IMG/VR virus record: IMGVR_UViG_3300023174_000038
Location: 186,001-250,000 of that record
Length of the DNA stretch: 64,000 nucleotides
Direction: 5' to 3' (one strand)
The translations under genes and the position numbers were made by a program. Positions within the stretch are counted from its first letter, which is position 1; every line of letters starts with the position of its first letter. Positions 6,760 through 17,552 of this stretch are shown here, in pieces. The notes below the pieces were generated by a model that was not told the DNA's origin, ran no database searches, and was given only the letters and a program-made list of their open reading frames with translations.

Positions 6760-7374
6760 TTAGTTCCTTTTCTTATATAAATCTCTTTCATTATTGTAAC
6801 GATTGAATTTACGACCTTTAATCCAACCCTGGTCATAATAGTGAGGATAAAGCGCATATGGAATACATTGACTCTTGCTCAAATCAAAGTTTGAAACCCA
6901 GATAGTATTTCCTTTAGCATTTCCTTTCCTTTCTTTTGTCCAACTAAGGCGTTGTCCATGTGAACTGGCCGCTAGGTATTTTTCACGATAAACGGCATCA
7001 TTTAACATTCTATCTCGGTGCTTTAATCCTGCAATCTTAGCAGCCTTGGTTTGCTGTCCCGGTTGATGTCCTTGATTAGGTAATGTGTTTATATAAGAAA
7101 AGGAACCGTGGCCCCCTTCTACTATATTATAAGTAGTGTCTAAACTAACGAAATCCGCGTTTACGACCTGTTTTTCTCTAAATAACATTGATTCTTTGTC
7201 ATTGAAGTGTTCAATGATTTCTTTGACAAAATTCTCTTTACCATATTTTTTGATTGCACGATGAAGATTCAGACCGGATCCAAAGTACCCATCATTTAAG
7301 TCGGAAGTTTGATGAACACCTATATAGATTTTATTATTTAATGTATTGGTGATTTTGTATAGATAATAGAACAT
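6760..7374 (-). CDS. GIY-YIG homing endonuclease (Seg-like)
   Basis: YLYKITN...KIYIG, YFGSG, AIKKYGKENF, YNIVEGG. Confidence 0.88.
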   Translation of the reverse strand: MFYYLYKITNTLNNKIYIGVHQTSDLNDGYFGSGLNLHRAIKKYGKENFVKEIIEHFNDKESMLFREKQVVNADFVSLDTTYNIVEGGHGSFSYINTLPNQGHQPGQQTKAAKIAGLKHRDRMLNDAVYREKYLAASSHGQRLSWTKERKGNAKGNTIWVSNFDLSKSQCIPYALYPHYYDQGWIKGRKFNRYNNERDLYKKRN

Positions 7375-7428
7375 ATTGTATTTATACGGACAGTAAGATG
7401 AAACTATATTAATATACTAACCCTATCA

Positions 7429-7529
7429 TGTCGTGTAGTGATACACGGCATTCTAAAACATACATCGTGGAAAATAAGGCCAAGAGGGCAACCCTGTTGA
7501 TTAGGGTGTACTATGTGTGTTTTAGAATG
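7429..7529 (+). ncRNA. Candidate structured ncRNA B (long closing stem)
   Basis: Hairpin TGTCGTGTA/TACACGGCA then 17-bp stem CATTCTAAAACATACAT/ATGTGTGTTTTAGAATG ending at the tRNA-Arg start. Confidence 0.55.
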
Positions 7530-7605
7530 CGACCGTAACTCAGTGGATTAGAGTACCTGTCTACGAAATAGGGAGTCGGAGGTTCAAGTCCTTCCGGTCG
7601 CACCA
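7529..7605 (+). tRNA. tRNA-Arg(ACG)
   Basis: Cloverleaf, anticodon arm CCTGT-CT ACG AA-ATAGG, encoded CCA. Confidence 0.95.
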
Positions 7606-7611
7606 ATATAT

Positions 7612-7687
7612 GGGACCATAGCTCAGTCGGTAGAGCAGTGGACTTTTAATCCATTGGTCGGGCGTTCGAACCGCCCTGGTCCCACCA
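7612..7687 (+). tRNA. tRNA-Lys(TTT)
   Basis: GTGGA-CT TTT AA-TCCAT, CCA. Confidence 0.95.
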
Positions 7688-7693
7688 TAATAT

Positions 7694-7783
7694 GGAAACG
7701 TGGCAGAGTTTGGTTTATTGCAACAGTCTTGAAAACTGTCGGTCCGAAAGGGCCCGTGAGTTCAAATCTCACCGTTTCTACCA
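7694..7783 (+). tRNA. tRNA-Ser(TGA)
   Basis: ACAGT-CT TGA AA-ACTGT, long variable arm, CCA. Confidence 0.95.
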
Positions 7784-7784
7784 T

Positions 7785-7861
7785 GGTGCTTGTCGTCAAG
7801 CGGTTAAGACCTCGGATTGTGATTCCGATATGCGTGGGTTCAAATCCCATCAAGCACCCCA
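7785..7861 (+). tRNA. tRNA-His(GTG)
   Basis: TCGGA-TT GTG AT-TCCGA, G-1:C73, CCA. Confidence 0.95.
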
Positions 7862-7862
7862 T

Positions 7863-7937
7863 GGATGTATAGCACAGCGGTAGTGCAATTCCTTCATACG
7901 GAATAGGTCAGTAGTTCAAATCTACTTACATCCACCA
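7863..7937 (+). tRNA. tRNA-Met(CAT), probably elongator
   Basis: ATTCC-TT CAT AC-GGAAT, CCA. Confidence 0.85.
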
Positions 7938-7942
7938 AACAT

Positions 7943-8016
7943 GCCCGGTTAGTTAAAAAGTATAACACACCCCTGATAAGGGTGAATCAGAGGAGCATTA
8001 CCTCTACTGGGTACCA
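7943..8016 (+). tRNA. tRNA-Ile(GAT), atypical D and T loops
   Basis: CACCC-CT GAT AA-GGGTG; acceptor GCCCGGT/ACTGGGT-A-CCA; T loop AGCATTA. Confidence 0.8.
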
Positions 8017-8023
8017 AATTTAC

Positions 8024-8097
8024 TGGGGGTTAGTTAAATGGTATAACATCGGATTTTGATTCCGAGATCACAAGTTCAATTCTTGTACCCTCTGCCA
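8024..8097 (+). tRNA. tRNA-Gln(TTG)
   Basis: TCGGA-TT TTG AT-TCCGA, CCA. Confidence 0.92.
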
Positions 8098-8179
8098 GTT
8101 ACGGAATATAATAAAGCCAAATTGATTGACAATCTGATATTAATCCTATTATAATGTTAAAAATTATATAGAAAGGTAT

Positions 8180-8503
8180 GTGATGGCAGGCAGATACATC
8201 GTTAGAAAATTTAAAAACGGAGTTAAGCATTTTTGGGATACTGATACAGGCAGTTGTATACACTGGTCTAAAGTCCAAGAGCGTATACCTAAAAAAGAAT
8301 TTGACAAATTATTTGAACAATTCAACAATAAACAACCAAAAAAAGAAAATGTTACTGAGCCACTTCCAAAACTATCTGAAATTTTGAGTGAAGTAATTAA
8401 CTTATATTCTGAAAAAATTTCAATAGAAGAAATAGTTGGAGCATTGGAGTTGTGCAAGACCCGTGCGTTAACAATGCATAAAATAAAAAAAATAAATCAA
8501 TGA
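8180..8503 (+). CDS. Hypothetical protein
   Basis: ORF after TTGACA-18-TATAAT (8126-8155) with AAGG SD. Confidence 0.65.
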   Translation: MMAGRYIVRKFKNGVKHFWDTDTGSCIHWSKVQERIPKKEFDKLFEQFNNKQPKKENVTEPLPKLSEILSEVINLYSEKISIEEIVGALELCKTRALTMHKIKKINQ

Positions 8504-8664
8504 GAGTGCCAGTTATGGGATAGACGATAGATTTGAGTCCCTGTCAATCTAGTCACAGTGGGGTTAACTGTGATGACACTATAGTATGATTTACGGGTGT
8601 ATAAACTTGCCTATACGAGACAATCTAACGAGGCTTACTAACAATAAGATAGTTAGGCTCCCTC
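8502..8664 (+). ncRNA. Candidate structured ncRNA C
   Basis: Hairpins TAGATT/AATCTA, TCACAGT/ACTGTGA, GTATA/TATAC, CTAAC/GTTAG; partial end pairing. Confidence 0.5.
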
Positions 8665-8671
8665 TTTTATC

Positions 8672-8746
8672 GGGTCCTTAGTTCAATGGATAGAATACGA
8701 TGCTTCGAACTTCGGGATGTGGGTTCAATTCCTGCAGGACCCGCCA
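8672..8746 (+). tRNA. tRNA-Arg(TCG)
   Basis: CGATG-CT TCG AA-CTTCG, acceptor GGGTCCT/AGGACCC-G-CCA. Confidence 0.88.
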
Positions 8747-8793
8747 TATGGCATTAAATACATATAGTGATAATAACAGAAAAGGAGTACTAC

Positions 8794-9354
8794 ATGGCTG
8801 TTCTAGCACTAGATATCTCGGGAGTTCCCCGGCAATGGATATCAAATGATGACGCAATTACCTATAAAGCAAAAGATGCCATAGCATGGTCAATGGGTAA
8901 TATTGTGGCTAAATATCGTGGTGGCATACAAAATGACGGTACATTAAGTTACTTAGAAGCTAATAGCATTATTGCTATCAAAGGTCATGGATTCAATCCA
9001 TACAAACACTCATGTGTTGCATTAACTAATAAAACATTGTTTGGTCGTGATAGACATGTATGTGCTTATTGCGGTGAACAGTTTCCAAACTATCATCTAT
9101 TAAGTCGTGACCACATTGTTCCACGTAGCAAAGGTGGTGAAAACACTTGGATGAATGTTGTTACCAGTTGTAAAACTTGTAACAGCAAAAAAGGACATAA
9201 GAGTTTAAAAGAAGTACGTATGGAATTACTATATGCACCTTATGTCCCAAACCACTACGAAAATATGATATTACAACATAGAACAATACTTGCTGACCAA
9301 ATGGAATATTTGTTAGCAGGTGTTCCAAAACATAGTAGAATATTATTAAGTTAG
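8794..9354 (+). CDS. HNH endonuclease family protein
   Basis: RDRHVCAYCG, SRDHIVPRSKGG, NVVTSCKTCNSKK; AAGGAG SD before ATG 8794. Confidence 0.9.
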   Translation: MAVLALDISGVPRQWISNDDAITYKAKDAIAWSMGNIVAKYRGGIQNDGTLSYLEANSIIAIKGHGFNPYKHSCVALTNKTLFGRDRHVCAYCGEQFPNYHLLSRDHIVPRSKGGENTWMNVVTSCKTCNSKKGHKSLKEVRMELLYAPYVPNHYENMILQHRTILADQMEYLLAGVPKHSRILLS

Positions 9355-9379
9355 TGTATAATACTATTAAATAAAATAC

Positions 9380-9454
9380 TCCCTTATAGCTCAGTGGTAG
9401 AGCAGCGCCCTTGTAAGGCGAAGGTCCCGTGTTCAAGTCATGGTGGGGGAACCA
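9380..9454 (+). tRNA. tRNA-Thr(TGT)
   Basis: CGCC-CT TGT AA-GGCG, CCA. Confidence 0.93.
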
Positions 9455-9461
9455 AATATAT

Positions 9462-9537
9462 TCTCTTGTAGCTCAGTCGGTAGAGCGTTTGACTGTTAAT
9501 CAAAATGTCCCTGGTTCGAGCCCAGGCAAGGGAGCCA
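9462..9537 (+). tRNA. tRNA-Asn(GTT)
   Basis: TTTGA-CT GTT AA-TCAAA, CCA. Confidence 0.95.
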
Positions 9538-9542
9538 AATTT

Positions 9543-10241
9543 ATGCATAAGATAAAAATATTCAGTCATATCATTGATACCCCAGATAGTTTAATGATTT
9601 TTAATAATCAATTCTCTTTACTTAAAGAAACTGGGTTACTAGACGTGGCATACAAAATATATCTATGCGTTAACGGAGAAGTATCTAAATTTGATACAAT
9701 ACAAGAATTAGCGAATCAATATCATAATGTAGAAATGATTCATACCAATACTAGTATTGAACATTATGAATATCCCACATTAAATTTTCTTAAAGAAAAT
9801 ATTGATAACGATACTGATTCTTATATTTTGTATTTTCATGTTAAAGGTGCTAGTAAAAACGAATCCAAAGATATACGTAATTGGCGTTTTCTATTAGAAT
9901 ACTATAATATCATAAAATATCAAACCTGTATAGATTATCTTAACAAGGGATATGATACAGTTGGTATACTATATAGAGAGGGTTTTCATAGTCAATGGCT
10001 ACACTATAGTGGAAACTTTTGGTGGGCTAATTCTAATCATATTAAGCGTTTACCTAAATTACCTCACCCATCTGATACATTAGGTGGCGGGAATAGTAAA
10101 ATTAGTATGTTGCCGTATATGAATGAAAACTTTAGATATGACCATGAAGCTTGGATAGGTTGTGTCAAACCCTGGAATTATATATCGTTGTTCCAAGATG
10201 ATATAGAAGAAGAAACACGTAGGATAATGAAATTATGTTAG
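9543..10241 (+). CDS. Hypothetical protein, possibly glycosyltransferase-like
   Basis: YEYPTL, LYFHVKG, HYSGNFWWA motifs; start moved past the tRNAs. Confidence 0.6.
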   Translation: MHKIKIFSHIIDTPDSLMIFNNQFSLLKETGLLDVAYKIYLCVNGEVSKFDTIQELANQYHNVEMIHTNTSIEHYEYPTLNFLKENIDNDTDSYILYFHVKGASKNESKDIRNWRFLLEYYNIIKYQTCIDYLNKGYDTVGILYREGFHSQWLHYSGNFWWANSNHIKRLPKLPHPSDTLGGGNSKISMLPYMNENFRYDHEAWIGCVKPWNYISLFQDDIEEETRRIMKLC

Positions 10242-10951
10242 TATCAGTAGACCCTTTTTATCATGTAACCATTGACAATTTTTTTGAGGAATCTTTAGCA
10301 GAAAAACTATCTAATGAATTTATTGATTATAATGATGAACGTTGGTTTTATTACAATAATGTTATTGAAAATAAAAAAACATTAAACGATTGGAGATTTT
10401 TACCCAAACATATATATCAAGCATTCACTCAGTTTTGCTCAGATGAATTTGTTAAAAAACTACAAGATATGACTGGTATAGAAAAATTGTATCCTGATTA
10501 TGGATTGCATGGTGGCGGCTGTCATATGCATGGTAGAAACGGTAAACTTAATATACATAGAGATTATTCTATACACCCTAAATTAGGATTAGAACGAAAG
10601 TTAAATCTTATTATATATCTATCTAAAGATTGGGATACGTCATGGGGAGGTGGATTAGAATTATGGTCACACGATGATGAAAACAATCAACCAAAAGAAA
10701 AAGTAAAAGAAGTAGAATGTGTTTTTAATCGTGCTGTACTTTTTGATACGACACAAGATTCTTGGCATGGTTTACCTGAACCCTTACGTTGTCCTGCAGG
10801 TGTCTATAGAAAAAGTTTAGCTATGTATTATATGACTAACCCTAGCCTAGAGGTTGACCCAAGACAACGGGCATTATTTGCACCCACAGAAAATCAGAAA
10901 AATGATATTGAAGTAAAAAACTTCATAGAAGAAAGAACAAAGCTTTCTTAA
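10235..10951 (+). CDS. 2OG-Fe(II) oxygenase
   Basis: HRD...LIIYL..WGGGLELW..FNRAVLF..SWHG..RKS. Confidence 0.88.
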   Translation: MLVSVDPFYHVTIDNFFEESLAEKLSNEFIDYNDERWFYYNNVIENKKTLNDWRFLPKHIYQAFTQFCSDEFVKKLQDMTGIEKLYPDYGLHGGGCHMHGRNGKLNIHRDYSIHPKLGLERKLNLIIYLSKDWDTSWGGGLELWSHDDENNQPKEKVKEVECVFNRAVLFDTTQDSWHGLPEPLRCPAGVYRKSLAMYYMTNPSLEVDPRQRALFAPTENQKNDIEVKNFIEERTKLS

Positions 10952-10954
10952 TAG

Positions 10955-11029
10955 CTGGCGTTAGTATAATGGATAATACAATCGGCTTCTACCCGATGAA
11001 TGTGGGTTCGATTCCTGCACGCCGGACCA
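10955..11029 (+). tRNA. tRNA-Arg(TCT)
   Basis: ATCGG-CT TCT AC-CCGAT, CCA. Confidence 0.92.
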
Positions 11030-11083
11030 AATAATATACGTATTTTATAGGTTAGAGATAAATACTCTAACCGAGGAGAGAGT

Positions 11084-11425
11084 ATGTGGAAATGTAAAAC
11101 ATGTGAAAAAGAAGGACAGGAACATTTTTATAAAAGCCAAGCTTGGTATTGTAAAAGTTGTTGGAATGTTCGTACGGCACACCGATCTAAAAACAATGTA
11201 AAAATTCTTAAAGAAGAATACGGTGGAAAATGCACCAAGTGTGGTTACAATAAATGCATGGATGCACTACAGTTTCACCATGTTGATCCTACTAAAAAGG
11301 AATTTTCATTAGGGTTAGCAAGACAAAAAAATTTAGATAAACTTAGAAAAGAGATGGACAAGTGTATTTTGGTTTGTAGTAATTGTCATATTGAAATTCA
11401 CCATGACATACATAAAAATAAATAA
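11084..11425 (+). CDS. HNH endonuclease with Zn-binding Cys pairs
   Basis: CxxC pairs, LQFHHVDP, CILVCSNCH. Confidence 0.85.
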   Translation: MWKCKTCEKEGQEHFYKSQAWYCKSCWNVRTAHRSKNNVKILKEEYGGKCTKCGYNKCMDALQFHHVDPTKKEFSLGLARQKNLDKLRKEMDKCILVCSNCHIEIHHDIHKNK

Positions 11426-11427
11426 AA

Positions 11428-11456
11428 TAGAGGTTCGATTCCTCTACGCCGGACCA
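11428..11456 (+). repeat. Duplicated 3' end (T arm and acceptor strand) of tRNA-Arg(TCT)
   Basis: AGAGGTTCGATTCCTCTACGCCGGACCA vs GTGGGTTCGATTCCTGCACGCCGGACCA at 11002-11029. Confidence 0.9.
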
Positions 11457-12035
11457 TTATTGAATTAGAAGTTGCCAATCTTCATTGCTATAGTGATAAT
11501 CTTCCAACACTTCTAGCATTCTTGCAAAGACAATTAATCCTCTTTTGTGATTAATTAATTCTATTTGATGTAATTTTATCTTCTTTTCAGCAAAAGTTTT
11601 TAATAAATTCTCACCCTCTTTTTTCAACTTAATTTTTTTTGAAACAATATTCAATTTGGCTATTAGATTGTTACATTCTACGATGGCAACAGAGGTTTGT
11701 TGTTGTAATGCACGTATTTCTATTTTCATTTTTAGTATTAAGTCATCAAATTCTGGGTTAATGTGTGGTAGAAATTGTGTTATCATAACAGACAGTCTAC
11801 CAAAGACTTCAGTATTAAGATTGAAGTCATCATAGTGATCACCTGTTGAATCATAGTGTTCACGTTTAGTTGGATCACTTAACACTTCATATGCTAATTT
11901 CATTCGCTTAAACTTTTCTACATCTCCTCCCTTGTCAGGATGATATAATTGTGCCAAGATTCTGTATTTTTGTTTGATTTCTTCAGACGTACAGGTTTTT
12001 GGTAATTCTAAATCATCGTATAGGGAGGTTGTCAT
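11457..12035 (-). CDS. DnaJ-domain protein
   Basis: LYDDLEL...YHPDKGG...AYEVLSDPTKREHYD. Confidence 0.88.
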   Translation of the reverse strand: MTTSLYDDLELPKTCTSEEIKQKYRILAQLYHPDKGGDVEKFKRMKLAYEVLSDPTKREHYDSTGDHYDDFNLNTEVFGRLSVMITQFLPHINPEFDDLILKMKIEIRALQQQTSVAIVECNNLIAKLNIVSKKIKLKKEGENLLKTFAEKKIKLHQIELINHKRGLIVFARMLEVLEDYHYSNEDWQLLIQ

Positions 12036-12088
12036 AACAATATTTATCATGAAATATTGCATGTAGTATTAAGTACTATGTTTAAAAT

Positions 12089-12198
12089 TTGACAATAAAT
12101 CCTCAATCTGCTATACTCTAGTTATAGATTGATTGAACAAGTTTTTGGGAAACAGTGAAACAAAAGAATTTGACAATAAATGGTAGTTATGATACAAT
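12089..12198 (+). promoter_or_regulatory. Two tandem sigma70-type promoters
   Basis: TTGACAATAAAT...TATACT and TTGACAATAAAT...TACAAT, 17-nt spacers. Confidence 0.75.
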
Positions 12199-12286
12199 CA
12201 TAGCATGAGTTGAGAAAGTCATCGTACTAATCAACAAGGTTCTTTAAAATTCTGAGTTATCATATAGCCCTGTTTAAGTTACAGGG

Positions 12287-12501
12287 ACTATATGAAAATA
12301 CATTAAGGTCACCTAATCCGTTAGGCAGGTCTATGGGGTCAGCCGGTGGACGACGCCGGGTCGCATAGGGTGCAAGAAGCGTATCGACAATAGCAATATT
12401 GTTTAACGTGACGGGCAGTTAGGCAGTAATGACAGAAACAACGATCCAGTAGACGGTACTGGTGGATACAGTTTACGTTCCTTAATGTGTTTTCATATAG
12501 T
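12287..12501 (+). ncRNA. Candidate structured ncRNA D (22-bp closing stem)
   Basis: ACTATATGAAAATACATTAAGG/CCTTAATGTGTTTTCATATAGT enclosing a GC-rich multibranch core. Confidence 0.65.
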
Positions 12502-12502
12502 G

Positions 12503-12629
12503 TGTTATTAGTTTTGCTGACGTAAGCGCCTGAGTAAACGTCAACTCTAACTAACTATGTATAGAAACGGTAAACTTGCAAATAATTCCGTTGAGCATAG
12601 CAAATAGTGCGTCAGCAAAACTAATAACA
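12503..12629 (+). ncRNA. Candidate structured ncRNA E (22-bp closing stem)
   Basis: TGTTATTAGTTTTGCTGACGTA/TGCGTCAGCAAAACTAATAACA, ends 1 nt before tRNA-Glu. Confidence 0.65.
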
Positions 12630-12630
12630 T

Positions 12631-12705
12631 GGAGCATTCGTCTATCGGTTAGGACATTAGGTTTTCATCCTAAGAAGAGGAGTTCGATTCTCCTATGCTC
12701 TTCCA
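12631..12705 (+). tRNA. tRNA-Glu(TTC)
   Basis: TTAGG-TT TTC AT-CCTAA, CCA. Confidence 0.93.
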
Positions 12706-12708
12706 AAG

Positions 12709-12905
12709 AATCCCGTTACTACTTTCGTTAAAGTAGCGTTTGAATAGCGATAGAGTTCCGGTGGCAGAAAACCGTTAGCGTGAGGATTAAAAATACCCTC
12801 GCAGGCTCTGATAGGCAGAATCTCAACTGCACACAGACTTTGAATAAATGGAGATGGACAGAGTAACTGCTCAATTAAGGGCTTGTGTGGAAACAAGTAG
12901 CTTAT
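12709..12905 (+). ncRNA. Candidate structured ncRNA F
   Basis: Hairpins CTACTTT/AAAGTAG, CGGT/ACCG, GCGTGAGG/CCTCGC, GAG-TAACTG-CTC, CTTGT/ACAAG. Confidence 0.5.
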
Positions 12906-12915
12906 ACTAATTTTT

Positions 12916-12978
12916 TGAGTTACATCGCCTTGATACTTCTCTCAGTAATGAGACACTAGGTCTTGCAACCGTAACTCA
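12916..12978 (+). ncRNA. Small tRNA-sized structured element G
   Basis: TGAGTTAC/GTAACTCA closing stem; inner TCTCA-GTAA-TGAGA. Confidence 0.4.
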
Positions 12979-12982
12979 TCTT

Positions 12983-13068
12983 GGAGATGTAGGAAAATTG
13001 GTAACCCCAGGAGACTGTAAATCTTCCGCCTTATGGCACTACTGGTTCAACTCCAGTCGTCTCCACCA
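12983..13068 (+). tRNA. tRNA-Tyr(GTA)
   Basis: GGAGA-CT GTA AA-TCTTC, variable arm, CCA. Confidence 0.93.
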
Positions 13069-13135
13069 AGAATATAGGAGGGTCGCTGGGCAGGCGTACT
13101 CTTAAACGACCTAGGCCAAAGGGGTGTCCTATTCT
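13069..13135 (+). ncRNA. Small structured element H
   Basis: ATAGGA/TCCTAT outer stem, GGGTCG/CGACCT inner stem. Confidence 0.4.
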
Positions 13136-13141
13136 GTGTTA

Positions 13142-13216
13142 GGTCTCAAAGTGTTCACGGACGCATACATGCCTGTCACGCATGAGGAGCGGGATCGTTA
13201 CCCGCTGGGACCGCCA
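13142..13216 (+). tRNA. tRNA-Asp(GTC), atypical T loop
   Basis: CATGC-CT GTC AC-GCATG; T loop ATCGTTA; GCCA end. Confidence 0.88.
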
Positions 13217-13262
13217 AAATATTTGACAACAATCATTGTATGATATATAGATAACAAGTTTT

Positions 13263-13347
13263 GCGAGTGTGGTGGAATCGGAATACACACAAGACTTAAA
13301 ATCTTGCGCCGCAAGGATTGAGGGTTCAAGTCCCTCCACTCGCACCA
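13263..13347 (+). tRNA. tRNA-Leu(TAA)
   Basis: CAAGA-CT TAA AA-TCTTG, variable arm, CCA. Confidence 0.95.
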
Positions 13348-13356
13348 AAGAATGAT

Positions 13357-13433
13357 GCCTCTATAGCGCAATTGGTTAGCGCAGCGGACTCATAATCCGT
13401 TGGTTCCTGGTTCGAGTCCAGGTGGAGGCACCA
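13357..13433 (+). tRNA. tRNA(CAT), probably Ile2 (lysidine type)
   Basis: GCGGA-CT CAT AA-TCCGT; context resembles proteobacterial tRNA-Ile2. Confidence 0.8.
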
Positions 13434-13441
13434 GTTAAGCA

Positions 13442-13533
13442 GGAGACGTGGCCGAGTGGCCGAAGGCAGCAGGTTGCTAACCTGTCGTATGTAGTAATAT
13501 GTACCGTGAGTTCGAATCTCACCGTCTCCACCA
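13442..13533 (+). tRNA. tRNA-Ser(GCT)
   Basis: GCAGG-TT GCT AA-CCTGT, long variable arm, CCA. Confidence 0.95.
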
Positions 13534-13534
13534 A

Positions 13535-13717
13535 TTAGCGATGGTTTGTTTTGTTTATGATTTGATGTAAGATGTTAGGATCATCACTCATCATCCTAGC
13601 TAGTAAACCAGTAAGATAACCCCGTTCATATAATAATTGTTCGTGGCTATCTTTGTAATTACGTTTGTTTTGACGCAACAACTTTTCAACAACATCAATA
13701 CAGTTTTGTAGTTCCAT
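13535..13717 (-). CDS. Small hypothetical protein (MELQNC...)
   Basis: TAAATA 4 nt upstream of ATG 13717. Confidence 0.6.
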   Translation of the reverse strand: MELQNCIDVVEKLLRQNKRNYKDSHEQLLYERGYLTGLLARMMSDDPNILHQIINKTNHR

Positions 13718-13732
13718 ACTGTATTTATAAAA

Positions 13733-13930
13733 GAACGTTCCGGGTGTCTCCGGATAGTGTGACCCACACGATGAGAAGTAGTGTGACAACTACGGGTGGT
13801 AGTCTTTAAACCGAAAGGCCGCTAGCAATGCGAGAACGGTCCCTGTCGGGAAGCGGGTGGAAGGAGTGTGTGATGGGTATGATAGCGTCATATCTTGATA
13901 CTCTATAATTACCGCCGGGGGATGCAGAGC
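13733..13930 (+). ncRNA. Candidate structured ncRNA I
   Basis: GC-rich; hairpins TCCGG/CCGGA, GTGTG/CACAC, GTAGT/ACTAC, TATGA/TCATA; TCCCT/GGGGA. Confidence 0.55.
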
Positions 13931-13936
13931 ATATAT

Positions 13937-14014
13937 GCAACGGTGGCAGAGTGGTCCAATGCAACGGATTGCAAATCCGTAAAACCGTCAGTTCAAATCT
14001 GACCCGTTGCTCCA
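13937..14014 (+). tRNA. tRNA-Cys(GCA)
   Basis: ACGGA-TT GCA AA-TCCGT, U73-CCA. Confidence 0.93.
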
Positions 14015-14019
14015 AACAA

Positions 14020-14184
14020 TTATAGTGCTTGTATAAAAGCAAGTGCTGTTTCAATATTATTGAAGAATTTCATAGTCAATTTGAAATTGTCAACATCAAA
14101 TACCATAATGTAAAATGTATGTTCAGCACTCATTGATAAGTGTATAACAAGTCCTGTTTTCGTGATAGCGTCATATATGTACAT
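14020..14184 (-). CDS. Small hypothetical protein (MYIYDAITK...)
   Basis: TAAATA 5 nt upstream of ATG 14184; longer ORF overlaps tRNA-Gly. Confidence 0.55.
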   Translation of the reverse strand: MYIYDAITKTGLVIHLSMSAEHTFYIMVFDVDNFKLTMKFFNNIETALAFIQAL

Positions 14185-14196
14185 AAATATATTTAT

Positions 14197-14270
14197 GCGG
14201 GGTTCGTATAGTGGTAATACCTCAGCCTTCCAAGCTGATGCGGAGAGTTCGATTCTCTTACCCCGCTCCA
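14197..14270 (+). tRNA. tRNA-Gly(TCC)
   Basis: TCAGC-CT TCC AA-GCTGA, U73-CCA. Confidence 0.95.
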
Positions 14271-14286
14271 TTATTATAAATATCAT

Positions 14287-14817
14287 ATGAAATTACTATT
14301 TGTGCCATTAGATATAAAAGTCACTGATATCAACTTTGATTTAGGTGAAAAACAAAACTATCACATAAATCATTGGGAAACATTTGATGTTATTGGGAAA
14401 GAAAATAATTATCAAAACTATAACAGTTTATTAAATCAACTTCCAATAACGGATATCACTATCTTTACACATAAGATTCAAAAAACTAAAATTGGACCTC
14501 ATTATGATTATCATGGTTTGCATGATGAATTATATAAACATTTCAAAGAAAATGAGCCAGCCGGCTATCATGTAGTTTTAAAAGGTAAAGGTGACTCATT
14601 AGAAATTTTTAACGGCAAAGAATGGATTAACCCTATATTACCTAAAGTGCCTATAGCATACTTACTAAATTTAACTTCTTGCATACATAGAGTAAAAGAA
14701 GATAATTCAAGAGAAACACTGTATATACAAGGTTGGTTAGATATTAAAAAACATAATCAATTAATAGAACGCAGTTTAAAACAATATGGCAATCTAGCAG
14801 TATATAGCCAAGCTTAA
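14287..14817 (+). CDS. Hypothetical protein, possible double-stranded beta-helix oxygenase
   Basis: PHYD...IHRV...R pattern; TATAAATA upstream. Confidence 0.5.
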   Translation: MKLLFVPLDIKVTDINFDLGEKQNYHINHWETFDVIGKENNYQNYNSLLNQLPITDITIFTHKIQKTKIGPHYDYHGLHDELYKHFKENEPAGYHVVLKGKGDSLEIFNGKEWINPILPKVPIAYLLNLTSCIHRVKEDNSRETLYIQGWLDIKKHNQLIERSLKQYGNLAVYSQA

Positions 14818-15093
14818 TTATTTACCAATTCTATTTAAAATGTTCATTGCTCTGGTTCTTAACCGTTCAGTAAATTCTGATTCAGTTAATGCTCCTTTAG
14901 CAAGATTACATTTTCTACAAGTTACTTGAAGATTATTATACGTGGTTTCTCCACCTTTACTTTCAGCAATCACATGATCTATGTGTATTTCTTTATCGGA
15001 TAAGTCTTCATCACAATAGACACACCATTTTCCGTCCCTTTCAATAACTCTACGACGTAGGTTAAGAGGGATGTATTGTTTCTTTTGTAGCAT
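14818..15093 (-). CDS. HNH endonuclease
   Basis: RDGKWCVYC, HIDHVIAESKGG, NLQVTCRKCNLAK. Confidence 0.9.
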   Translation of the reverse strand: MLQKKQYIPLNLRRRVIERDGKWCVYCDEDLSDKEIHIDHVIAESKGGETTYNNLQVTCRKCNLAKGALTESEFTERLRTRAMNILNRIGK

Positions 15094-15158
15094 AAATTTA
15101 TTTAGCTACCCAAATATAGTAGACAGATAAATAGTTTTCTGTTATTATGAATAATAAA

Positions 15159-15243
15159 GCGGACGTGGCGTAATTGGCAGCCGCACCAGATTTAGGTTCT
15201 GGCGTCGTAAGATGTGTGAGTTCGAGTCTCACCGTCCGCACCA
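15159..15243 (+). tRNA. tRNA-Leu(TAG)
   Basis: CCAGA-TT TAG GT-TCTGG, CCA. Confidence 0.95.
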
Positions 15244-15247
15244 AACA

Positions 15248-15321
15248 GGGGGATTGATGTAATGGGAGCCTGGGACCTTTGCAAGGTCTTCGTAACAGTT
15301 CGATTCTGTTATCCTCCACCA
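15248..15321 (+). tRNA. tRNA-Ala(TGC)
   Basis: GGACC-TT TGC AA-GGTCT; G3:U70; CCA. Confidence 0.9.
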
Positions 15322-15327
15322 AGATAG

Positions 15328-15402
15328 CGCGGGGTAGAGAAGTAGTAACTCATCAGGCTCATAACCTGAAGATCGGCGGTGCGAATCCGTCCCCCGCATC
15401 CA
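15328..15402 (+). tRNA. Initiator tRNA-fMet(CAT)
   Basis: CGCGGGG/CCCCGCA with C1:A72 mismatch; TCAGG-CT CAT AA-CCTGA. Confidence 0.9.
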
Positions 15403-15406
15403 GTTA

Positions 15407-15483
15407 CGGAGTGTGGCGCAGTCTGGTAGCGCACCTGGTTTGGGACCAGGGGGTCCAAGGTTCGAATCCTTGTACTCCGACCA
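15407..15483 (+). tRNA. tRNA-Pro(TGG)
   Basis: CCTGG-TT TGG GA-CCAGG, CCA. Confidence 0.95.
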
Positions 15484-15505
15484 ATGTTTTTAAAAAGGAA
15501 ATAGT

Positions 15506-15670
15506 ATGACATGCAGAGGATATGATGCGAAAGCAGTGAAAGTTTCAAAGACAGTTAAACGTGCCGCGGCAAAAATTATGGACAACCATAAGCGTGGTGA
15601 CTTTATTCGTAGTTATGTAGAGATTGAAAGAAGTAATTCACGTACAGGTTCTCGTAAGGATAGCAAATGA
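15506..15670 (+). CDS. Small basic hypothetical protein (MTCRGYDAK...)
   Basis: 54-aa ORF with AAGGA SD. Confidence 0.55.
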   Translation: MTCRGYDAKAVKVSKTVKRAAAKIMDNHKRGDFIRSYVEIERSNSRTGSRKDSK

Positions 15671-15846
15671 GTAAAGGTAGCTTGCCAAGACCTTATAGTG
15701 TTGATTTGAAAACTTTCAACAATAATTGGGATAATATCTTTCGCAAGCCTGATCCAAGAATTATTGAGGATCAAAAGAATGAAGATGAAGCATTTGAACA
15801 AATTGCTAGTCAATCAGAAGTTAAAGATAGTACCCAAGGTGGTTAA
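15667..15846 (+). CDS. Small hypothetical protein (MSKGSLPRP...)
   Basis: 59-aa ORF coupled by ATGA overlap. Confidence 0.55.
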   Translation: MSKGSLPRPYSVDLKTFNNNWDNIFRKPDPRIIEDQKNEDEAFEQIASQSEVKDSTQGG

Positions 15847-15855
15847 ATAGAATGT

Positions 15856-15930
15856 GGATCGTTAACTCAGTGGTAGAGTAGCGCCTTTACACGGCGAATG
15901 TCGGGAGTTCGACCCTCTCACGATCCACCA
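15856..15930 (+). tRNA. tRNA-Val(TAC)
   Basis: CGCC-TT TAC AC-GGCG, CCA. Confidence 0.93.
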
Positions 15931-15945
15931 AACAAAGGAGTAATT

Positions 15946-16086
15946 ATGAGCAAAAGTGAAGATGTAATTAATAGAGCATACGGACACATTGTCAAAGAAG
16001 TTACTCCGGTACTTATTTTTGATATTACTATATTTCGTGGTTTTAAATACTATTGGTACAAATTACTTAGAAAAGTAACAAGATAA
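15946..16086 (+). CDS. Small hypothetical protein
   Basis: AAGGAG SD then ATG 15946. Confidence 0.5.
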   Translation: MSKSEDVINRAYGHIVKEVTPVLIFDITIFRGFKYYWYKLLRKVTR

Positions 16087-16090
16087 AATT

Positions 16091-16627
16091 ATGGCACATC
16101 CGCAACAATTTAATTATATACAAAAACTTAAACTATTATATCCAACTCATTTCTTTAATAGCAAAGTACTTGAAGTGGGTAGTCTTAACATTAATGGTTC
16201 AATACGAATCTTTTTTAGTCATTGTGATTATTTAGGAATTGATGTTGGTCCGGGTAATGATGTTGACTTAGTATGTGAAGGTCAAACGTTAGATCATCCA
16301 GACAATACATATGATACAGTTGGTAGCTGTGAATGTTTTGAACATAATCCTTATTGGGTAGAAACATTCGTTAACATGCATCGTATGGCTAAACCAAATG
16401 GACTAGTGTTTATGACATGTGCTACTACTGGTAGACCAGAACACGGTACTACTCGTACTACACCACAAGATAGTCCTCTTACTACAGGTATAGGGTGGGA
16501 CTATTATAGAAATTTAACTGAAGAAGATTTCAGAAAAGAATTAGACATAGATAATATGTTTAGTACATATAAATTTGAAGTGGGTTCACCCCATGCAGAT
16601 TTGTATTTTTATGGTATTAAAAAATAA
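16091..16627 (+). CDS. Class I SAM-dependent methyltransferase
   Basis: VLEVGS, YLGIDVGPG, CFEHNP. Confidence 0.8.
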   Translation: MAHPQQFNYIQKLKLLYPTHFFNSKVLEVGSLNINGSIRIFFSHCDYLGIDVGPGNDVDLVCEGQTLDHPDNTYDTVGSCECFEHNPYWVETFVNMHRMAKPNGLVFMTCATTGRPEHGTTRTTPQDSPLTTGIGWDYYRNLTEEDFRKELDIDNMFSTYKFEVGSPHADLYFYGIKK

Positions 16628-16635
16628 AGGTAAAT

Positions 16636-16857
16636 ATGTCACAAAGCAGAGCAAGATATTCAAGTGAAGAAGCCGCACTTATGGTCGGTAATCGTTTTGA
16701 TTTAGTTCTTATCGCTTCACAAAGAGTAAGAGAATTAAAGCGAGGACATCGTTCACTACTTACTACTAAAGCAGGACCAATGGTAACTGCATTAGAAGAA
16801 ATTGAACAAGGACTTGTTGGACGTGAATATCTTAAACGTATTAGAAAAAATTTGTAA
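16636..16857 (+). CDS. rpoZ: RNA polymerase omega subunit
   Basis: ARYSSEEA..VGNRFDLVLIASQRVREL..ALEEIEQG. Confidence 0.9.
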   Translation: MSQSRARYSSEEAALMVGNRFDLVLIASQRVRELKRGHRSLLTTKAGPMVTALEEIEQGLVGREYLKRIRKNL

Positions 16858-16861
16858 ATAT

Positions 16862-16935
16862 ATCTCCCTAATGTAATGGCAGCATACCGGTCTCCAAAAC
16901 CGTTAGTCAAGGTTCGAGTCCTTGGGGGGATGCCA
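16862..16935 (+). tRNA. tRNA-Trp(CCA)
   Basis: CGGT-CT CCA AA-ACCG, G73-CCA. Confidence 0.9.
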
Positions 16936-16949
16936 AATAAAGGAATGTT

Positions 16950-17552
16950 ATGCCCGCTGTATTTTTAACAAGTGACACCCACTTTGGGCATGCCGGAGTA
17001 TGCCATTTCACACGTAACGATGGGGTTACAAAACTTCGCCCATGGACTGATCCAGATGAGATGGATGAAGAAATGGTTAAGCGTTGGAACGAAACAGTAC
17101 GACCTAATGATAAAGTATATCATTTGGGTGATGTTGTAATCAATCGTAAAGCACTAAAGATTATGAGTCGGTTAAACGGTGACAAAGTATTGATTCGTGG
17201 TAACCACGATATCTTCCGTGATGATGAGTATAGAGAACACTTTAGAGAGTTACGTGCCTATCATGTTATGAATGGAATGATATTAAGTCATATTCCTATA
17301 CATGAAGAATCATTGGGACGATTTGGTGTTAACATTCACGGTCATTTACATGCCAATCGTGTAATGAAACATGTTGAGACTTTACATGAGTTTCATGAAC
17401 GTGGTAGTAGACATTATATTGATGTACGTTATCATTGTGTATGTGTAGAACATACAGACTATAGACCTATATTGTTTGAAGATGTTATCAAACGCATTGA
17501 AAGTGAAGGTGGTACTGTAGGATTTAAGAACGGTAATGGACCTACAATGTAA
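16950..17552 (+). CDS. Calcineurin-like metallophosphoesterase
   Basis: SDTHFGH, LGD, GNHD, SH, HGHLH. Confidence 0.9.
   Translation: MPAVFLTSDTHFGHAGVCHFTRNDGVTKLRPWTDPDEMDEEMVKRWNETVRPNDKVYHLGDVVINRKALKIMSRLNGDKVLIRGNHDIFRDDEYREHFRELRAYHVMNGMILSHIPIHEESLGRFGVNIHGHLHANRVMKHVETLHEFHERGSRHYIDVRYHCVCVEHTDYRPILFEDVIKRIESEGGTVGFKNGNGPTM

What the first reader, a model, noticed from the sequence alone, without database searches (positions are those of the whole stretch)
12503..12631. Second 22-bp-stem RNA ending at the tRNA-Glu 5' end
Seen: 12503-12524 pairs with 12608-12629 around an 83-nt interior. It starts 1 nt after element D and ends 1 nt before tRNA-Glu. Established: RNase P cuts at tRNA +1. 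Inference: tRNA processing would give this RNA a defined, stem-protected 3' end, so the tRNAs may punctuate an ncRNA polycistron.
Basis: partly seen in the sequence, partly recalled or inferred. Interest (0 to 1): 0.68.

Follow-up and report, generated by a model that had tools for sequence, protein, structure and literature searches.

The report
Conserved phage RNA wedged between tRNAs
A 127-nt element closed by a 22-bp helix lies flush against tRNA genes in an uncultured freshwater jumbo phage and in over 100 related sequences; compensatory mutations show it is a real structured RNA absent from Rfam 15, probably cut out of the tRNA precursor by host nucleases, and its own function is unknown.

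Summary
Window 12503-12524 pairs with 12608-12629 (21 Watson-Crick pairs plus 1 G.U). The element starts 1 nt after the neighbouring hairpin D and ends 1 nt before tRNA-Glu.

It is not a chance repeat. I found about 105 distinct homologues in IMG/VR and metagenome contigs, and none in 185,579 prokaryote species genomes.
- They keep a 21-27-bp closing helix through many compensatory changes: 61 different 5' arm sequences, 277 G.U pairs against 4 A.C.
- The helix closes a conserved three-way-junction core.
- In 91 of 105, a same-strand tRNA starts within 7 nt of the 3' end. That tRNA varies among eight identities.
- In about a third, the upstream tRNA's ACCA end forms the first bases of the helix.

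No Rfam family, tRNA model or phage T4 rnaC/rnaD matches it.

Best reading: a new structured-RNA cassette in a tRNA-punctuated ncRNA/tRNA operon. RNase P would define its 3' side, and an RNase III-type cut in the helix is likely. Processing and trans function are inferred, not shown. RNA-library contigs cover its interior only weakly.

Interest is moderate.

The parts
12089..12117 (+). Promoter-like site 1: TTGACA, 17 nt, TATACT, extended -10 TG. It lies upstream of D, E and tRNA-Glu.
   Evidence: 11 of 12 consensus positions; sequence
12170..12198 (+). Promoter-like site 2: TTGACA, 17 nt, TACAAT, extended -10 TG.
   Evidence: 11 of 12 consensus positions
12287..12501 (+). Element D, a neighbouring cassette. 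Its 22-bp stem (12287-12308 / 12480-12501) encloses a 171-nt G+C-rich interior. It ends 1 nt before E.
   Evidence: z = -5.2. In relatives the D-type stem covaries and its interior ranges from about 32 to 171 nt.
12503..12524 (+). E helix P1, 5' arm.
12528..12551 (+). Lone covarying pair G12528-C12551 that brackets hairpin P2. P2 is 12532-12534 paired with 12545-12547. Its loop, 12535-12544, is nearly invariant (UAAACGUCA).
   Evidence: Columns 27:51 read C-G 28, G-C 15, U.G 1. P2 columns 31-33 / 45-47 have 8, 19 and 1 double changes.
12555..12600 (+). Arm P3. P3a is 12555-12559 / 12596-12600. P3b is 12566-12570 / 12588-12592. The apical hairpin 12571-12587 is variable and covaries.
   Evidence: The apical pairs have 15 and 17 double changes. 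P3b G-C changes to A-U in L061.
12601..12607 (+). Junction strand J3/1 (CAAAUAG), nearly invariant. Its A12606 and G12607 could form tandem sheared pairs with G12526 and A12525 (inference only).
   Evidence: invariant columns
12608..12629 (+). E helix P1, 3' arm.
12630..12630 (+). Single spacer base, U at position -1 of tRNA-Glu. This is the expected RNase P cleavage junction.
   Evidence: U at -1 in 42 of 47 distinct contexts
12631..12705 (+). tRNA-Glu(UUC).

Best explanation
Element E (window 12503-12629) is a gene-like cassette for a structured RNA absent from Rfam 15. It is embedded in the phage's tRNA operon.

Anatomy: a 22-bp closing helix (21-27 bp in relatives) holds a conserved three-way junction. 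The junction has a short hairpin with a nearly invariant loop (UAAACGUCA) and a longer arm with a variable tip.

Proposed mechanism:
1. E is transcribed on the + strand together with D, tRNA-Glu and F from the consensus-like promoters at 12089 and 12170.
2. It is released by the host's stable-RNA processing enzymes. RNase P cutting at tRNA-Glu +1 (12631) sets the 3' side.
3. There is no single-stranded spacer on either flank. In many relatives the upstream tRNA's ACCA is buried in the helix. An RNase III-type cut inside the two-turn helix therefore most likely separates the neighbours and frees the core on a shortened stem.
4. The core then probably acts in trans through its invariant loops. 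The partner is unknown.

Shown here: the helix, the covariation, the strand, the tRNA abutment, and restriction to uncultured phage and metagenome sequences, mostly freshwater.
Inferred: the transcription unit, the nucleases, and any trans function.
For: - Helix and fold.
- 44 distinct homologues are 98.3% paired. 26 of 38 pairs have double changes, and 0 of 500 shuffles or slid registers come close.
- Across 103 distinct copies there are 61 different 5' arms. The helix is 19 bp or longer in 97 of 103 (95 of them 21-27 bp). G.U is 277 against A.C 4, so the structure exists in + strand RNA, not in DNA.
- A same-strand tRNA follows within -7 to +7 nt in 91 of 105 copies and has eight identities. 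U is at -1 in 42 of 47.
- The upstream tRNA's 3' end lies 4-9 nt inside the helix in 34 distinct copies.
- Two near-consensus promoters lie upstream.
- RNA-library contigs lie on the array's non-coding elements, including the E interior at 12526-12608.
- Other stem-closed cassettes of about 20-22 bp, with different cores, occupy the same tRNA-Glu 3' position in arrays that lack E. A similar long hairpin abuts the first tRNA of the array.
- E. coli RNase III is reported to take part in T4 tRNA maturation (PMC4810235).
Against: - No 5' or 3' ends were mapped. The only RNA evidence for E itself is one low-depth contig over its interior, while neighbouring element F is covered far more heavily in the same libraries. 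The tool warns that contig depth cannot rank RNAs.
- The phage encodes no RNase III and the host is unknown, so the helix cut rests on analogy.
- No complementary target of the conserved loops exists in the phage genome.
- No partner protein was identified.
- Cassettes with different cores share the long stem, so the stem alone might be the functional part.
Confidence: 0.55

Rival explanations
1. E is a cis-acting processing or insulator spacer only. The long helix and folded core keep neighbouring tRNAs from misfolding and give nucleases a defined cut site. The excised piece is then degraded and has no function of its own.
For: - Long stems of similar length close cassettes with unrelated cores at the same position, and also close D and the leader hairpin at 7448-7530.
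- The upstream tRNA's ACCA overlaps the helix, so full-length E and a mature upstream tRNA cannot both come from one transcript.
- The E interior is represented by a single low-depth contig in RNA libraries, whereas F is abundant (with the tool's caveat on depth).
Against: - The interior is far more conserved than a spacer needs: 34 invariant columns in 44 distinct sequences, concentrated in loops and junction strands.
- The core has its own covarying helices and a lone conserved tertiary-like pair.
- The same core is kept while the helix sequence and both neighbouring tRNAs change.
Confidence: 0.27
2. E is a trans-acting decoy or regulator aimed at host tRNA biology or anti-phage defence. Examples would be a tRNA-modifying enzyme or an anticodon nuclease. 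Its production would be tied to the tRNAs it accompanies.
For: - The element is nearly always next to tRNA-Glu(UUC).
- 133 of its 151 downstream partners read the tRNAs with 2-thiouridine at position 34 (Lys, Glu, Gln) or queuosine at position 34 (Tyr, Asp). From general knowledge, these are the classes known anticodon nucleases attack.
- The single-stranded loops are invariant.
- The element is restricted to phage contigs.
Against: The neighbour bias may only reflect inherited array order. There is no sequence or structural mimicry of a tRNA: ARAGORN and the Rfam tRNA model are silent on E. No partner is identified.
Confidence: 0.1
3. E is a DNA-level element: a miniature transposable element with terminal inverted repeats, a homing-endonuclease target, or a cruciform or origin-type palindrome.
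For: It is 127 bp with 22-bp terminal inverted repeats. The tRNA array is full of HNH and GIY-YIG homing-endonuclease genes. E changes position between arrays.
Against: - There is one copy in the 348.7-kb genome.
- The arms vary freely while the interior is conserved, the opposite of transposase-bound repeats.
- G.U 277 against A.C 4 shows selection on one transcribed strand.
- Orientation always matches the tRNAs, and the junctions fall at tRNA ends.
Confidence: 0.04
4. The stem is a chance inverted repeat or an intrinsic terminator.
For: The region is A+T-rich and contains several inverted repeats.
Against: z = -6.5. There is covariation in 26 of 38 pairs. No U-tract follows the stem, since the next bases are U and then the tRNA. 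The terminator scan does not list it.
Confidence: 0.01

Closest known systems
Phage T4 small stable RNAs rnaC and rnaD (species 1 and 2) in the T4 tRNA cluster
   Same: They are small non-tRNA RNAs of 139 and 119 nt. They are encoded head to tail right after a tRNA (1-nt and 6-nt gaps) in a phage tRNA operon interspersed with a homing endonuclease. Function is unknown. From memory, species 1 is an RNase III substrate in vitro.
   Different: There is no homology: the E covariance model scores at most 9.4 bits on the T4 region. T4 rnaC carries a tRNA-like T-arm, and neither RNA has a closing helix of about 22 bp.
RNase III processing stalks of bacterial rRNA operons and phage T7 early transcripts; RNase III in T4 and chlorella-virus tRNA maturation
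   Same: A double-stranded helix of two or more turns, formed by sequences flanking a functional RNA, is cut first. Neighbouring tRNAs are then finished by RNase P and exonucleases (general knowledge; PMC4810235).
   Different: Here the enclosed RNA is only 83 nt. The helix touches tRNAs directly and can include the tRNA's own ACCA. Cleavage is not demonstrated, and the phage has no RNase III gene.
Mitochondrial tRNA punctuation, and tRNA-linked non-coding RNAs (MHV68 tRNA-miRNA transcripts, MALAT1 mascRNA, plant tRNA-snoRNA genes, E. coli 3'ETS-leuZ)
   Same: tRNA-processing enzymes define the ends of an adjacent non-tRNA RNA. In MHV68, hairpins follow tRNA-like units directly (general knowledge).
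   Different: Those systems are eukaryotic or organellar, or are an unstructured bacterial spacer. None shares sequence or fold with E.
GOLLD and ROOL large ncRNAs and other orphan phage/tRNA-adjacent Rfam motifs
   Same: They are structured RNAs of unknown function found in phages and lake metagenomes, often beside tRNA genes (PMC12286853, listed; general knowledge).
   Different: No Rfam 15 family matches anything but tRNAs across 7000-17500, even at E up to 5. E is 127 nt, against 500-800 nt for those RNAs.
Correia/ERIC-type miniature inverted-repeat elements
   Same: They are about 100-150 bp with 20-26-bp terminal inverted repeats. Their transcripts can be RNase III substrates (general knowledge).
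   Different: E is single-copy and strand-specific. Its arms are variable and its interior conserved.

Membership tests
Any Rfam 15 family (including tRNA, tmRNA, YrlA/Y RNA, GOLLD, ROOL, self-cleaving ribozymes) | Covariance-model score at or above the family's gathering threshold | tested here: not met
   At gathering threshold only tRNAs are found in the whole window. At E up to 5 over 7000-17500, no hit overlaps 12503-12629.
tRNA or tRNA-like gene | Cloverleaf detected by ARAGORN or RF00005 | tested here: not met
   The 25 tRNAs found do not include E.
T4 rnaC/rnaD stable RNAs | Sequence and structure homology to T4 species 1 or 2 RNA | tested here: not met
   Model R1 run with filters off on T4 66000-76000 gives at most 9.4 bits, and none of the listed matches (E up to 10) lies on rnaC or rnaD.
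T4 rnaC/rnaD stable RNAs | Non-tRNA small RNA gene placed within a few nt of a tRNA in a phage tRNA operon (the 'kind', not homology) | tested here: met
   T4 gaps are 1 and 6 nt. E gaps are -7 to +7 nt in 91 of 105 copies.
RNase III substrate | Uninterrupted dsRNA helix of about two turns (20 bp or more) | tested here: met
   22 pairs in the window. The helix is 21-27 bp in 95 of 103 homologues, and 99.1% of P1 cells are paired.
RNase III substrate | Actual staggered cleavage within the helix | not testable with these tools
   This needs an in-vitro cleavage assay or end-mapping. Only contigs, not raw reads, were available.
RNase P-defined 3' end (tRNA punctuation) | Element ends at or within a few nt of tRNA +1 on the same strand, conserved across relatives | tested here: met
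RNase P-defined 3' end (tRNA punctuation) | Observed RNA 3' end at position -1 of the tRNA | not testable with these tools
   Contigs cannot show ends.
Intrinsic terminator | G+C-rich stem followed by a U-tract | tested here: not met
   The stem is followed by U and then G of the tRNA. It is absent from the terminator scan.
Miniature inverted-repeat transposable element | Many dispersed copies; conserved terminal repeats; no strand bias of mismatches | tested here: not met
   One copy in the genome. 61 different arm sequences. G.U 277 against A.C 4.
Retron msr-msd ncRNA | Flanking inverted repeats plus an adjacent reverse transcriptase gene | not tested
   Neighbours scanned with PHROGs are homing endonucleases, a methyltransferase and a phosphoesterase; no RT was seen among them. 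No dedicated RT search of the genome was run. The 83-nt interior is too short for msr plus msd (inference).

The most novel reading that the evidence does not exclude
E is one of a set of interchangeable RNA cargo cassettes that these freshwater jumbo phages plug into their tRNA arrays. A standard two-turn helix, which can borrow the upstream tRNA's ACCA, acts as a universal processing adaptor. The E core is a trans-acting RNA, such as a decoy or regulator, that binds a host factor linked to tRNA-Glu/Lys/Gln biology or to tRNA-targeting defence. This would be a new class of phage counter-defence or host-takeover RNA whose dosage is coupled to phage tRNA expression.
Probability: 0.12. Interest if true: 0.8.

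Novelty: new variant of a known kind. Interest (0 to 1): 0.55.

Why it matters
Phage tRNA clusters are usually annotated as tRNAs plus junk spacers. Here the spacers are filled, base for base, by conserved structured RNAs. This one is supported by unusually clean covariation and occurs in well over a hundred uncultured-phage sequences.

It offers three things:
- A new RNA family to add to Rfam.
- A natural example of bacterial-virus tRNA punctuation, in which a standard two-turn helix may act as a processing adaptor.
- A tractable test system. The promoters are E. coli-like, so the 1-kb segment can be expressed in wild-type, rnc and rnpA-ts strains to see how spacer-less tRNA arrays are taken apart.

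If the core has a trans function, it would add to the very short list of phage small RNAs with known roles.

Tried and rejected
- Rfam at gathering and permissive thresholds found nothing but tRNAs.
- megablast and blastn of 12040-13300 against 50,697 phage records matched only tRNA segments, so no cultured relative was seen.
- The T4 rnaC/rnaD homology test was negative.
- There is no phage-encoded RNase III (TIGR02191) in the genome.
- Only one significant copy of E was found in the genome (E = 2.2e-32). The only other + strand hit is 17 bits at E = 0.36, at G000:126496-126607, and I treat it as noise.
- Antisense targets of the conserved loops in the 348.7-kb genome were only self-matches and chance-level hits.
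- A prokaryote-genome scan with a 21.5-base conserved pattern gave 0 hits, so there is no prophage or host clue.
- PHROGs on ten large ORFs of the window gave no lineage marker.
- I considered a hammerhead-like reading of CUGAUG in the helix and dropped it. Those bases covary as helix pairs and are replaced in relatives.
- I considered RNase P RNA-like or SRP-like readings of neighbouring element F by eye. I dropped them for lack of any model hit.
- I could not check whether E is among the 8,495 IMG/VR candidate structured RNAs of PMC10690425, because no supplementary files are held.
- One paper search failed on a too-short term.

Full report
**Where the window comes from.** The window is bases 186001-250000 of a single 348,701-base IMG/VR virus record. 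CheckV rates it complete and linear. Sequencing runs that hold it are lake and freshwater metagenomes. It carries 25 tRNA genes, all on the + strand, between 7529 and 16935. HNH and GIY-YIG homing-endonuclease genes are interspersed among them. So this is the tRNA array of an uncultured freshwater jumbo phage. No cultured phage record matched beyond individual tRNAs.

**The observation.** Bases 12503-12524 pair with 12608-12629: 21 Watson-Crick pairs and one U.G (12523 with 12609), around an 83-nt interior. The RNA folds at -42.9 kcal/mol, 6.5 standard deviations below shuffles. The preceding hairpin D has a stem of the same length, 12287-12308 / 12480-12501, ending at 12501. tRNA-Glu(UUC) starts at 12631. 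Two near-consensus sigma-70-type promoters lie upstream at 12089-12117 and 12170-12198. There is no U-tract, no terminator call and no plausible ORF.

**Is it more than chance? Comparative evidence.**
- A 20-nt arm found 12 viral contigs.
- A pattern taken only from the interior found 53, which removed the bias towards identical stems.
- A MAFFT alignment of 44 distinct copies gives a three-way junction.
  - P1 has 22 pairs, 99.1% paired, and 15 of them show compensatory double changes.
  - P2 is a 3-4-bp hairpin with 8, 19 and 1 double changes. Its loop UAAACGUCA is almost invariant.
  - P3 has two largely invariant helices and a covarying, variable tip.
  - One isolated pair, window 12528:12551, switches between G-C and C-G in 15 sequences.
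- Overall 98.3% of cells are paired and 26 of 38 pairs covary. None of 500 column shuffles or any slid register approaches this.
- Pooled, there are 103-105 distinct elements with 61 different 5' arm sequences. The helix is 19 bp or longer in 97 of 103, and 21-27 bp in 95 of them.
- The helix holds 277 G.U pairs against 4 A.C mismatches. That asymmetry means the helix is selected in RNA read in the tRNA sense. It rules out a DNA palindrome or transposon-type terminal repeats.
- The same conserved pattern has no match in one genome from each of 185,579 prokaryote species, and the phage genome holds a single copy.

**Context that bears on mechanism.**
- In 91 of 105 distinct copies, a same-strand tRNA begins -7 to +7 nt from the end of the helix. 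In the first set, U is at -1 in 42 of 47.
- That tRNA is not fixed. It is Lys(UUU), Glu(UUC), Gln(UUG), Tyr, Met, Cys, Asp or Ala in different arrays. So the abutment itself, not one tRNA, is conserved.
- On the 5' side there are two arrangements.
  - Window type: D, then E, then tRNA-Glu, with 0-2 nt between modules.
  - Second type: tRNA-Glu (or Asn), then E, then the next tRNA. Here the upstream tRNA's last 4-9 nt, including ACCA, are the first bases of the P1 5' arm.
- In arrays without E, the spacer from tRNA-Glu to the next tRNA is filled by other cassettes. They have equally long stems (about 20-22 bp) that also start with the tRNA's ACCA, but their interiors are unrelated.
- A comparable hairpin (7448-7468 / 7510-7530) abuts the first tRNA of the array and is conserved in relatives.
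- Other non-tRNA elements (F, G, H, S1) also fill inter-tRNA gaps to the base.

**Expression.** Only assembled contigs of four metatranscriptomes could be laid.
- Contigs lie on D's interior, on F, on 13600-14000 and on tRNAs.
- One low-depth contig begins at 12526 and covers the E interior to 12608.
- Depth over F is orders of magnitude above that over E in the same libraries. Uniform DNA contamination would not give that pattern. The tool warns, however, that contig depth cannot rank RNAs, and small hairpin RNAs are poorly captured.
- I therefore take this as presence in RNA libraries, with a hint that E is not an abundant stable species.

**How it most likely works.**
- Shown: E is a conserved RNA structure on the tRNA strand, wedged between tRNA-processing sites.
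- Inferred from established enzymology: RNase P cleavage at tRNA +1 releases the 3' side.
- Neither flank has a single-stranded spacer for RNase E. In many relatives a mature upstream tRNA requires the helix to be opened. A helix of two full turns without bulges is the canonical RNase III substrate.
- The most economical model is therefore an RNase III-type cut within P1. Exonucleolytic trimming back to the upstream CCA and RNase P trimming of the downstream leader would follow. This is the logic of rRNA operons.
- It matches the reported role of RNase III in T4 tRNA maturation (PMC4810235).
- The phage has no RNase III of its own, so a host enzyme would be used.
- The core's many invariant loop and junction bases argue that the released core has a function beyond spacing. 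I found no target in the phage genome and no partner.
- The main rival is that E is purely a cis-acting processing module.

**Comparison with known systems.**
- The closest kind is the pair of small stable RNAs, rnaC and rnaD, that follow tRNA-Arg in the T4 tRNA cluster. E is not homologous to them and differs in architecture.
- It works like rRNA processing stalks and like tRNA-punctuated transcripts of organelles.
- It resembles in spirit the tRNA-hairpin transcripts of MHV68 (general knowledge).
- It matches no Rfam 15 family.
- A 2023 catalogue of 8,495 candidate structured RNAs from IMG/VR (PMC10690425) may contain it as an unnamed candidate. That could not be checked.

**Verdict.**
The punctuation idea is supported by comparison. 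'Stem-protected 3' end' is unproven and in part unlikely.
- In novelty, this is a new RNA family and a new architectural variant: a standard long closing helix that can absorb the neighbour's ACCA, with interchangeable cores. It sits within the known kind 'small RNAs embedded in phage tRNA operons'.
- Interest is moderate. The case is clean and testable, but the function is unknown.

Noticed in passing
window 12706-12900: Element F is a non-tRNA RNA of about 195 nt that starts -1 to +1 nt after a tRNA 3' end (Glu, Tyr, Ile, Lys, Leu or Cys in different arrays). Often another tRNA follows 13-15 nt after it. A 27-mer from it hits 99 IMG/VR stretches, and there are 71 distinct, very conserved sequences. 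Contigs of four metatranscriptomes cover it at very high word depth. It has no Rfam hit and no long closing stem.
   Followed up: partly
window 13534-13936 (conserved 3' half about 13733-13936): Element G lies between tRNA-Ser and tRNA-Cys. In relatives its 3' half abuts a following tRNA (Cys, Thr, Ile or Leu) by 0-12 nt. RNA-library contigs cover 13601-14000 at high depth. It has no Rfam hit.
   Followed up: partly
window 14015-14196 and 13069-13141: Element H (182 nt) fills the Cys-Gly spacer with 1-nt gaps. Element S1 (73 nt, closed by a stem of about 12 bp) fills the Tyr-Asp spacer with 0-nt gaps. Both recur in relatives.
   Followed up: partly
window 7448-7530: A 21-bp hairpin with a 41-nt interior has a 3' arm that runs 2 nt into the first tRNA of the array, Arg-ACG. 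Relatives L008-L011 and L030 keep an 18-24-bp stem there with a different interior.
   Followed up: partly
window 12262-12308 and 12480-12501: The 5' arm of D (ACUAUAUGA...) can pair either with an upstream segment, giving hairpin 12262-12297 around CCCUG/CAGGG, or with D's 3' arm. These are two mutually exclusive structures right after the promoters. The D interior varies from about 32 to 171 nt among relatives.
   Followed up: partly
L098, L127, L059, L070; L104, L114, L128, L064, L069; L103, L125, L090 (tRNA-Glu 3' flank): Arrays without E carry other cassettes between tRNA-Glu and the next tRNA. All start with the tRNA's ACCA as the first stem bases and have stems of about 19-22 bp. There are at least two further conserved core types of about 75 and 110 nt.
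   Followed up: partly
E homologues in L001-L256: The tRNA immediately after E is Lys(UUU), Glu(UUC) or Gln(UUG) in 96 of 151 scored contexts (+ 54, of which 138 have a tRNA within 10 nt). It is Tyr or Asp in another 33. These are the 2-thiouridine-34 and queuosine-34 tRNAs. The bias may be inherited gene order or may be meaningful.
   Followed up: no
window 6760-7374, 8767-9354, 10235-10951, 11084-11425, 14818-15093: Homing-endonuclease-type genes lie between tRNAs: a homing-endonuclease family with a weaker GIY-YIG-annotated match, three HNH (two truncated-looking), and an endonuclease V-like ORF. This resembles segB in the T4 tRNA cluster. Their positions differ between relatives, which explains the shuffled array order.
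   Followed up: partly
window 12319, 12420, 12811: The heptamer TAGGCAG occurs twice in D's interior and once in F (GTTAGGCAG, GTTAGGCAG, GATAGGCAG). The copy in F is in an invariant stretch.
   Followed up: no
L007 and L024 (IMGVR_UViG_3300027749_002876, 524,565 b): One contig carries two complete D-E-tRNA-Glu-F arrays about 310 kb apart, with slightly different sequence. This may be a chimeric or concatenated assembly, or a true duplication.
   Followed up: no
window 16091-16627 and 16950-17552: A SAM-dependent methyltransferase (phrog_32762, E = 4e-74) and a phosphoesterase (phrog_547) flank the last tRNA, Trp. They are possible RNA-modification or repair functions next to the array.
   Followed up: no
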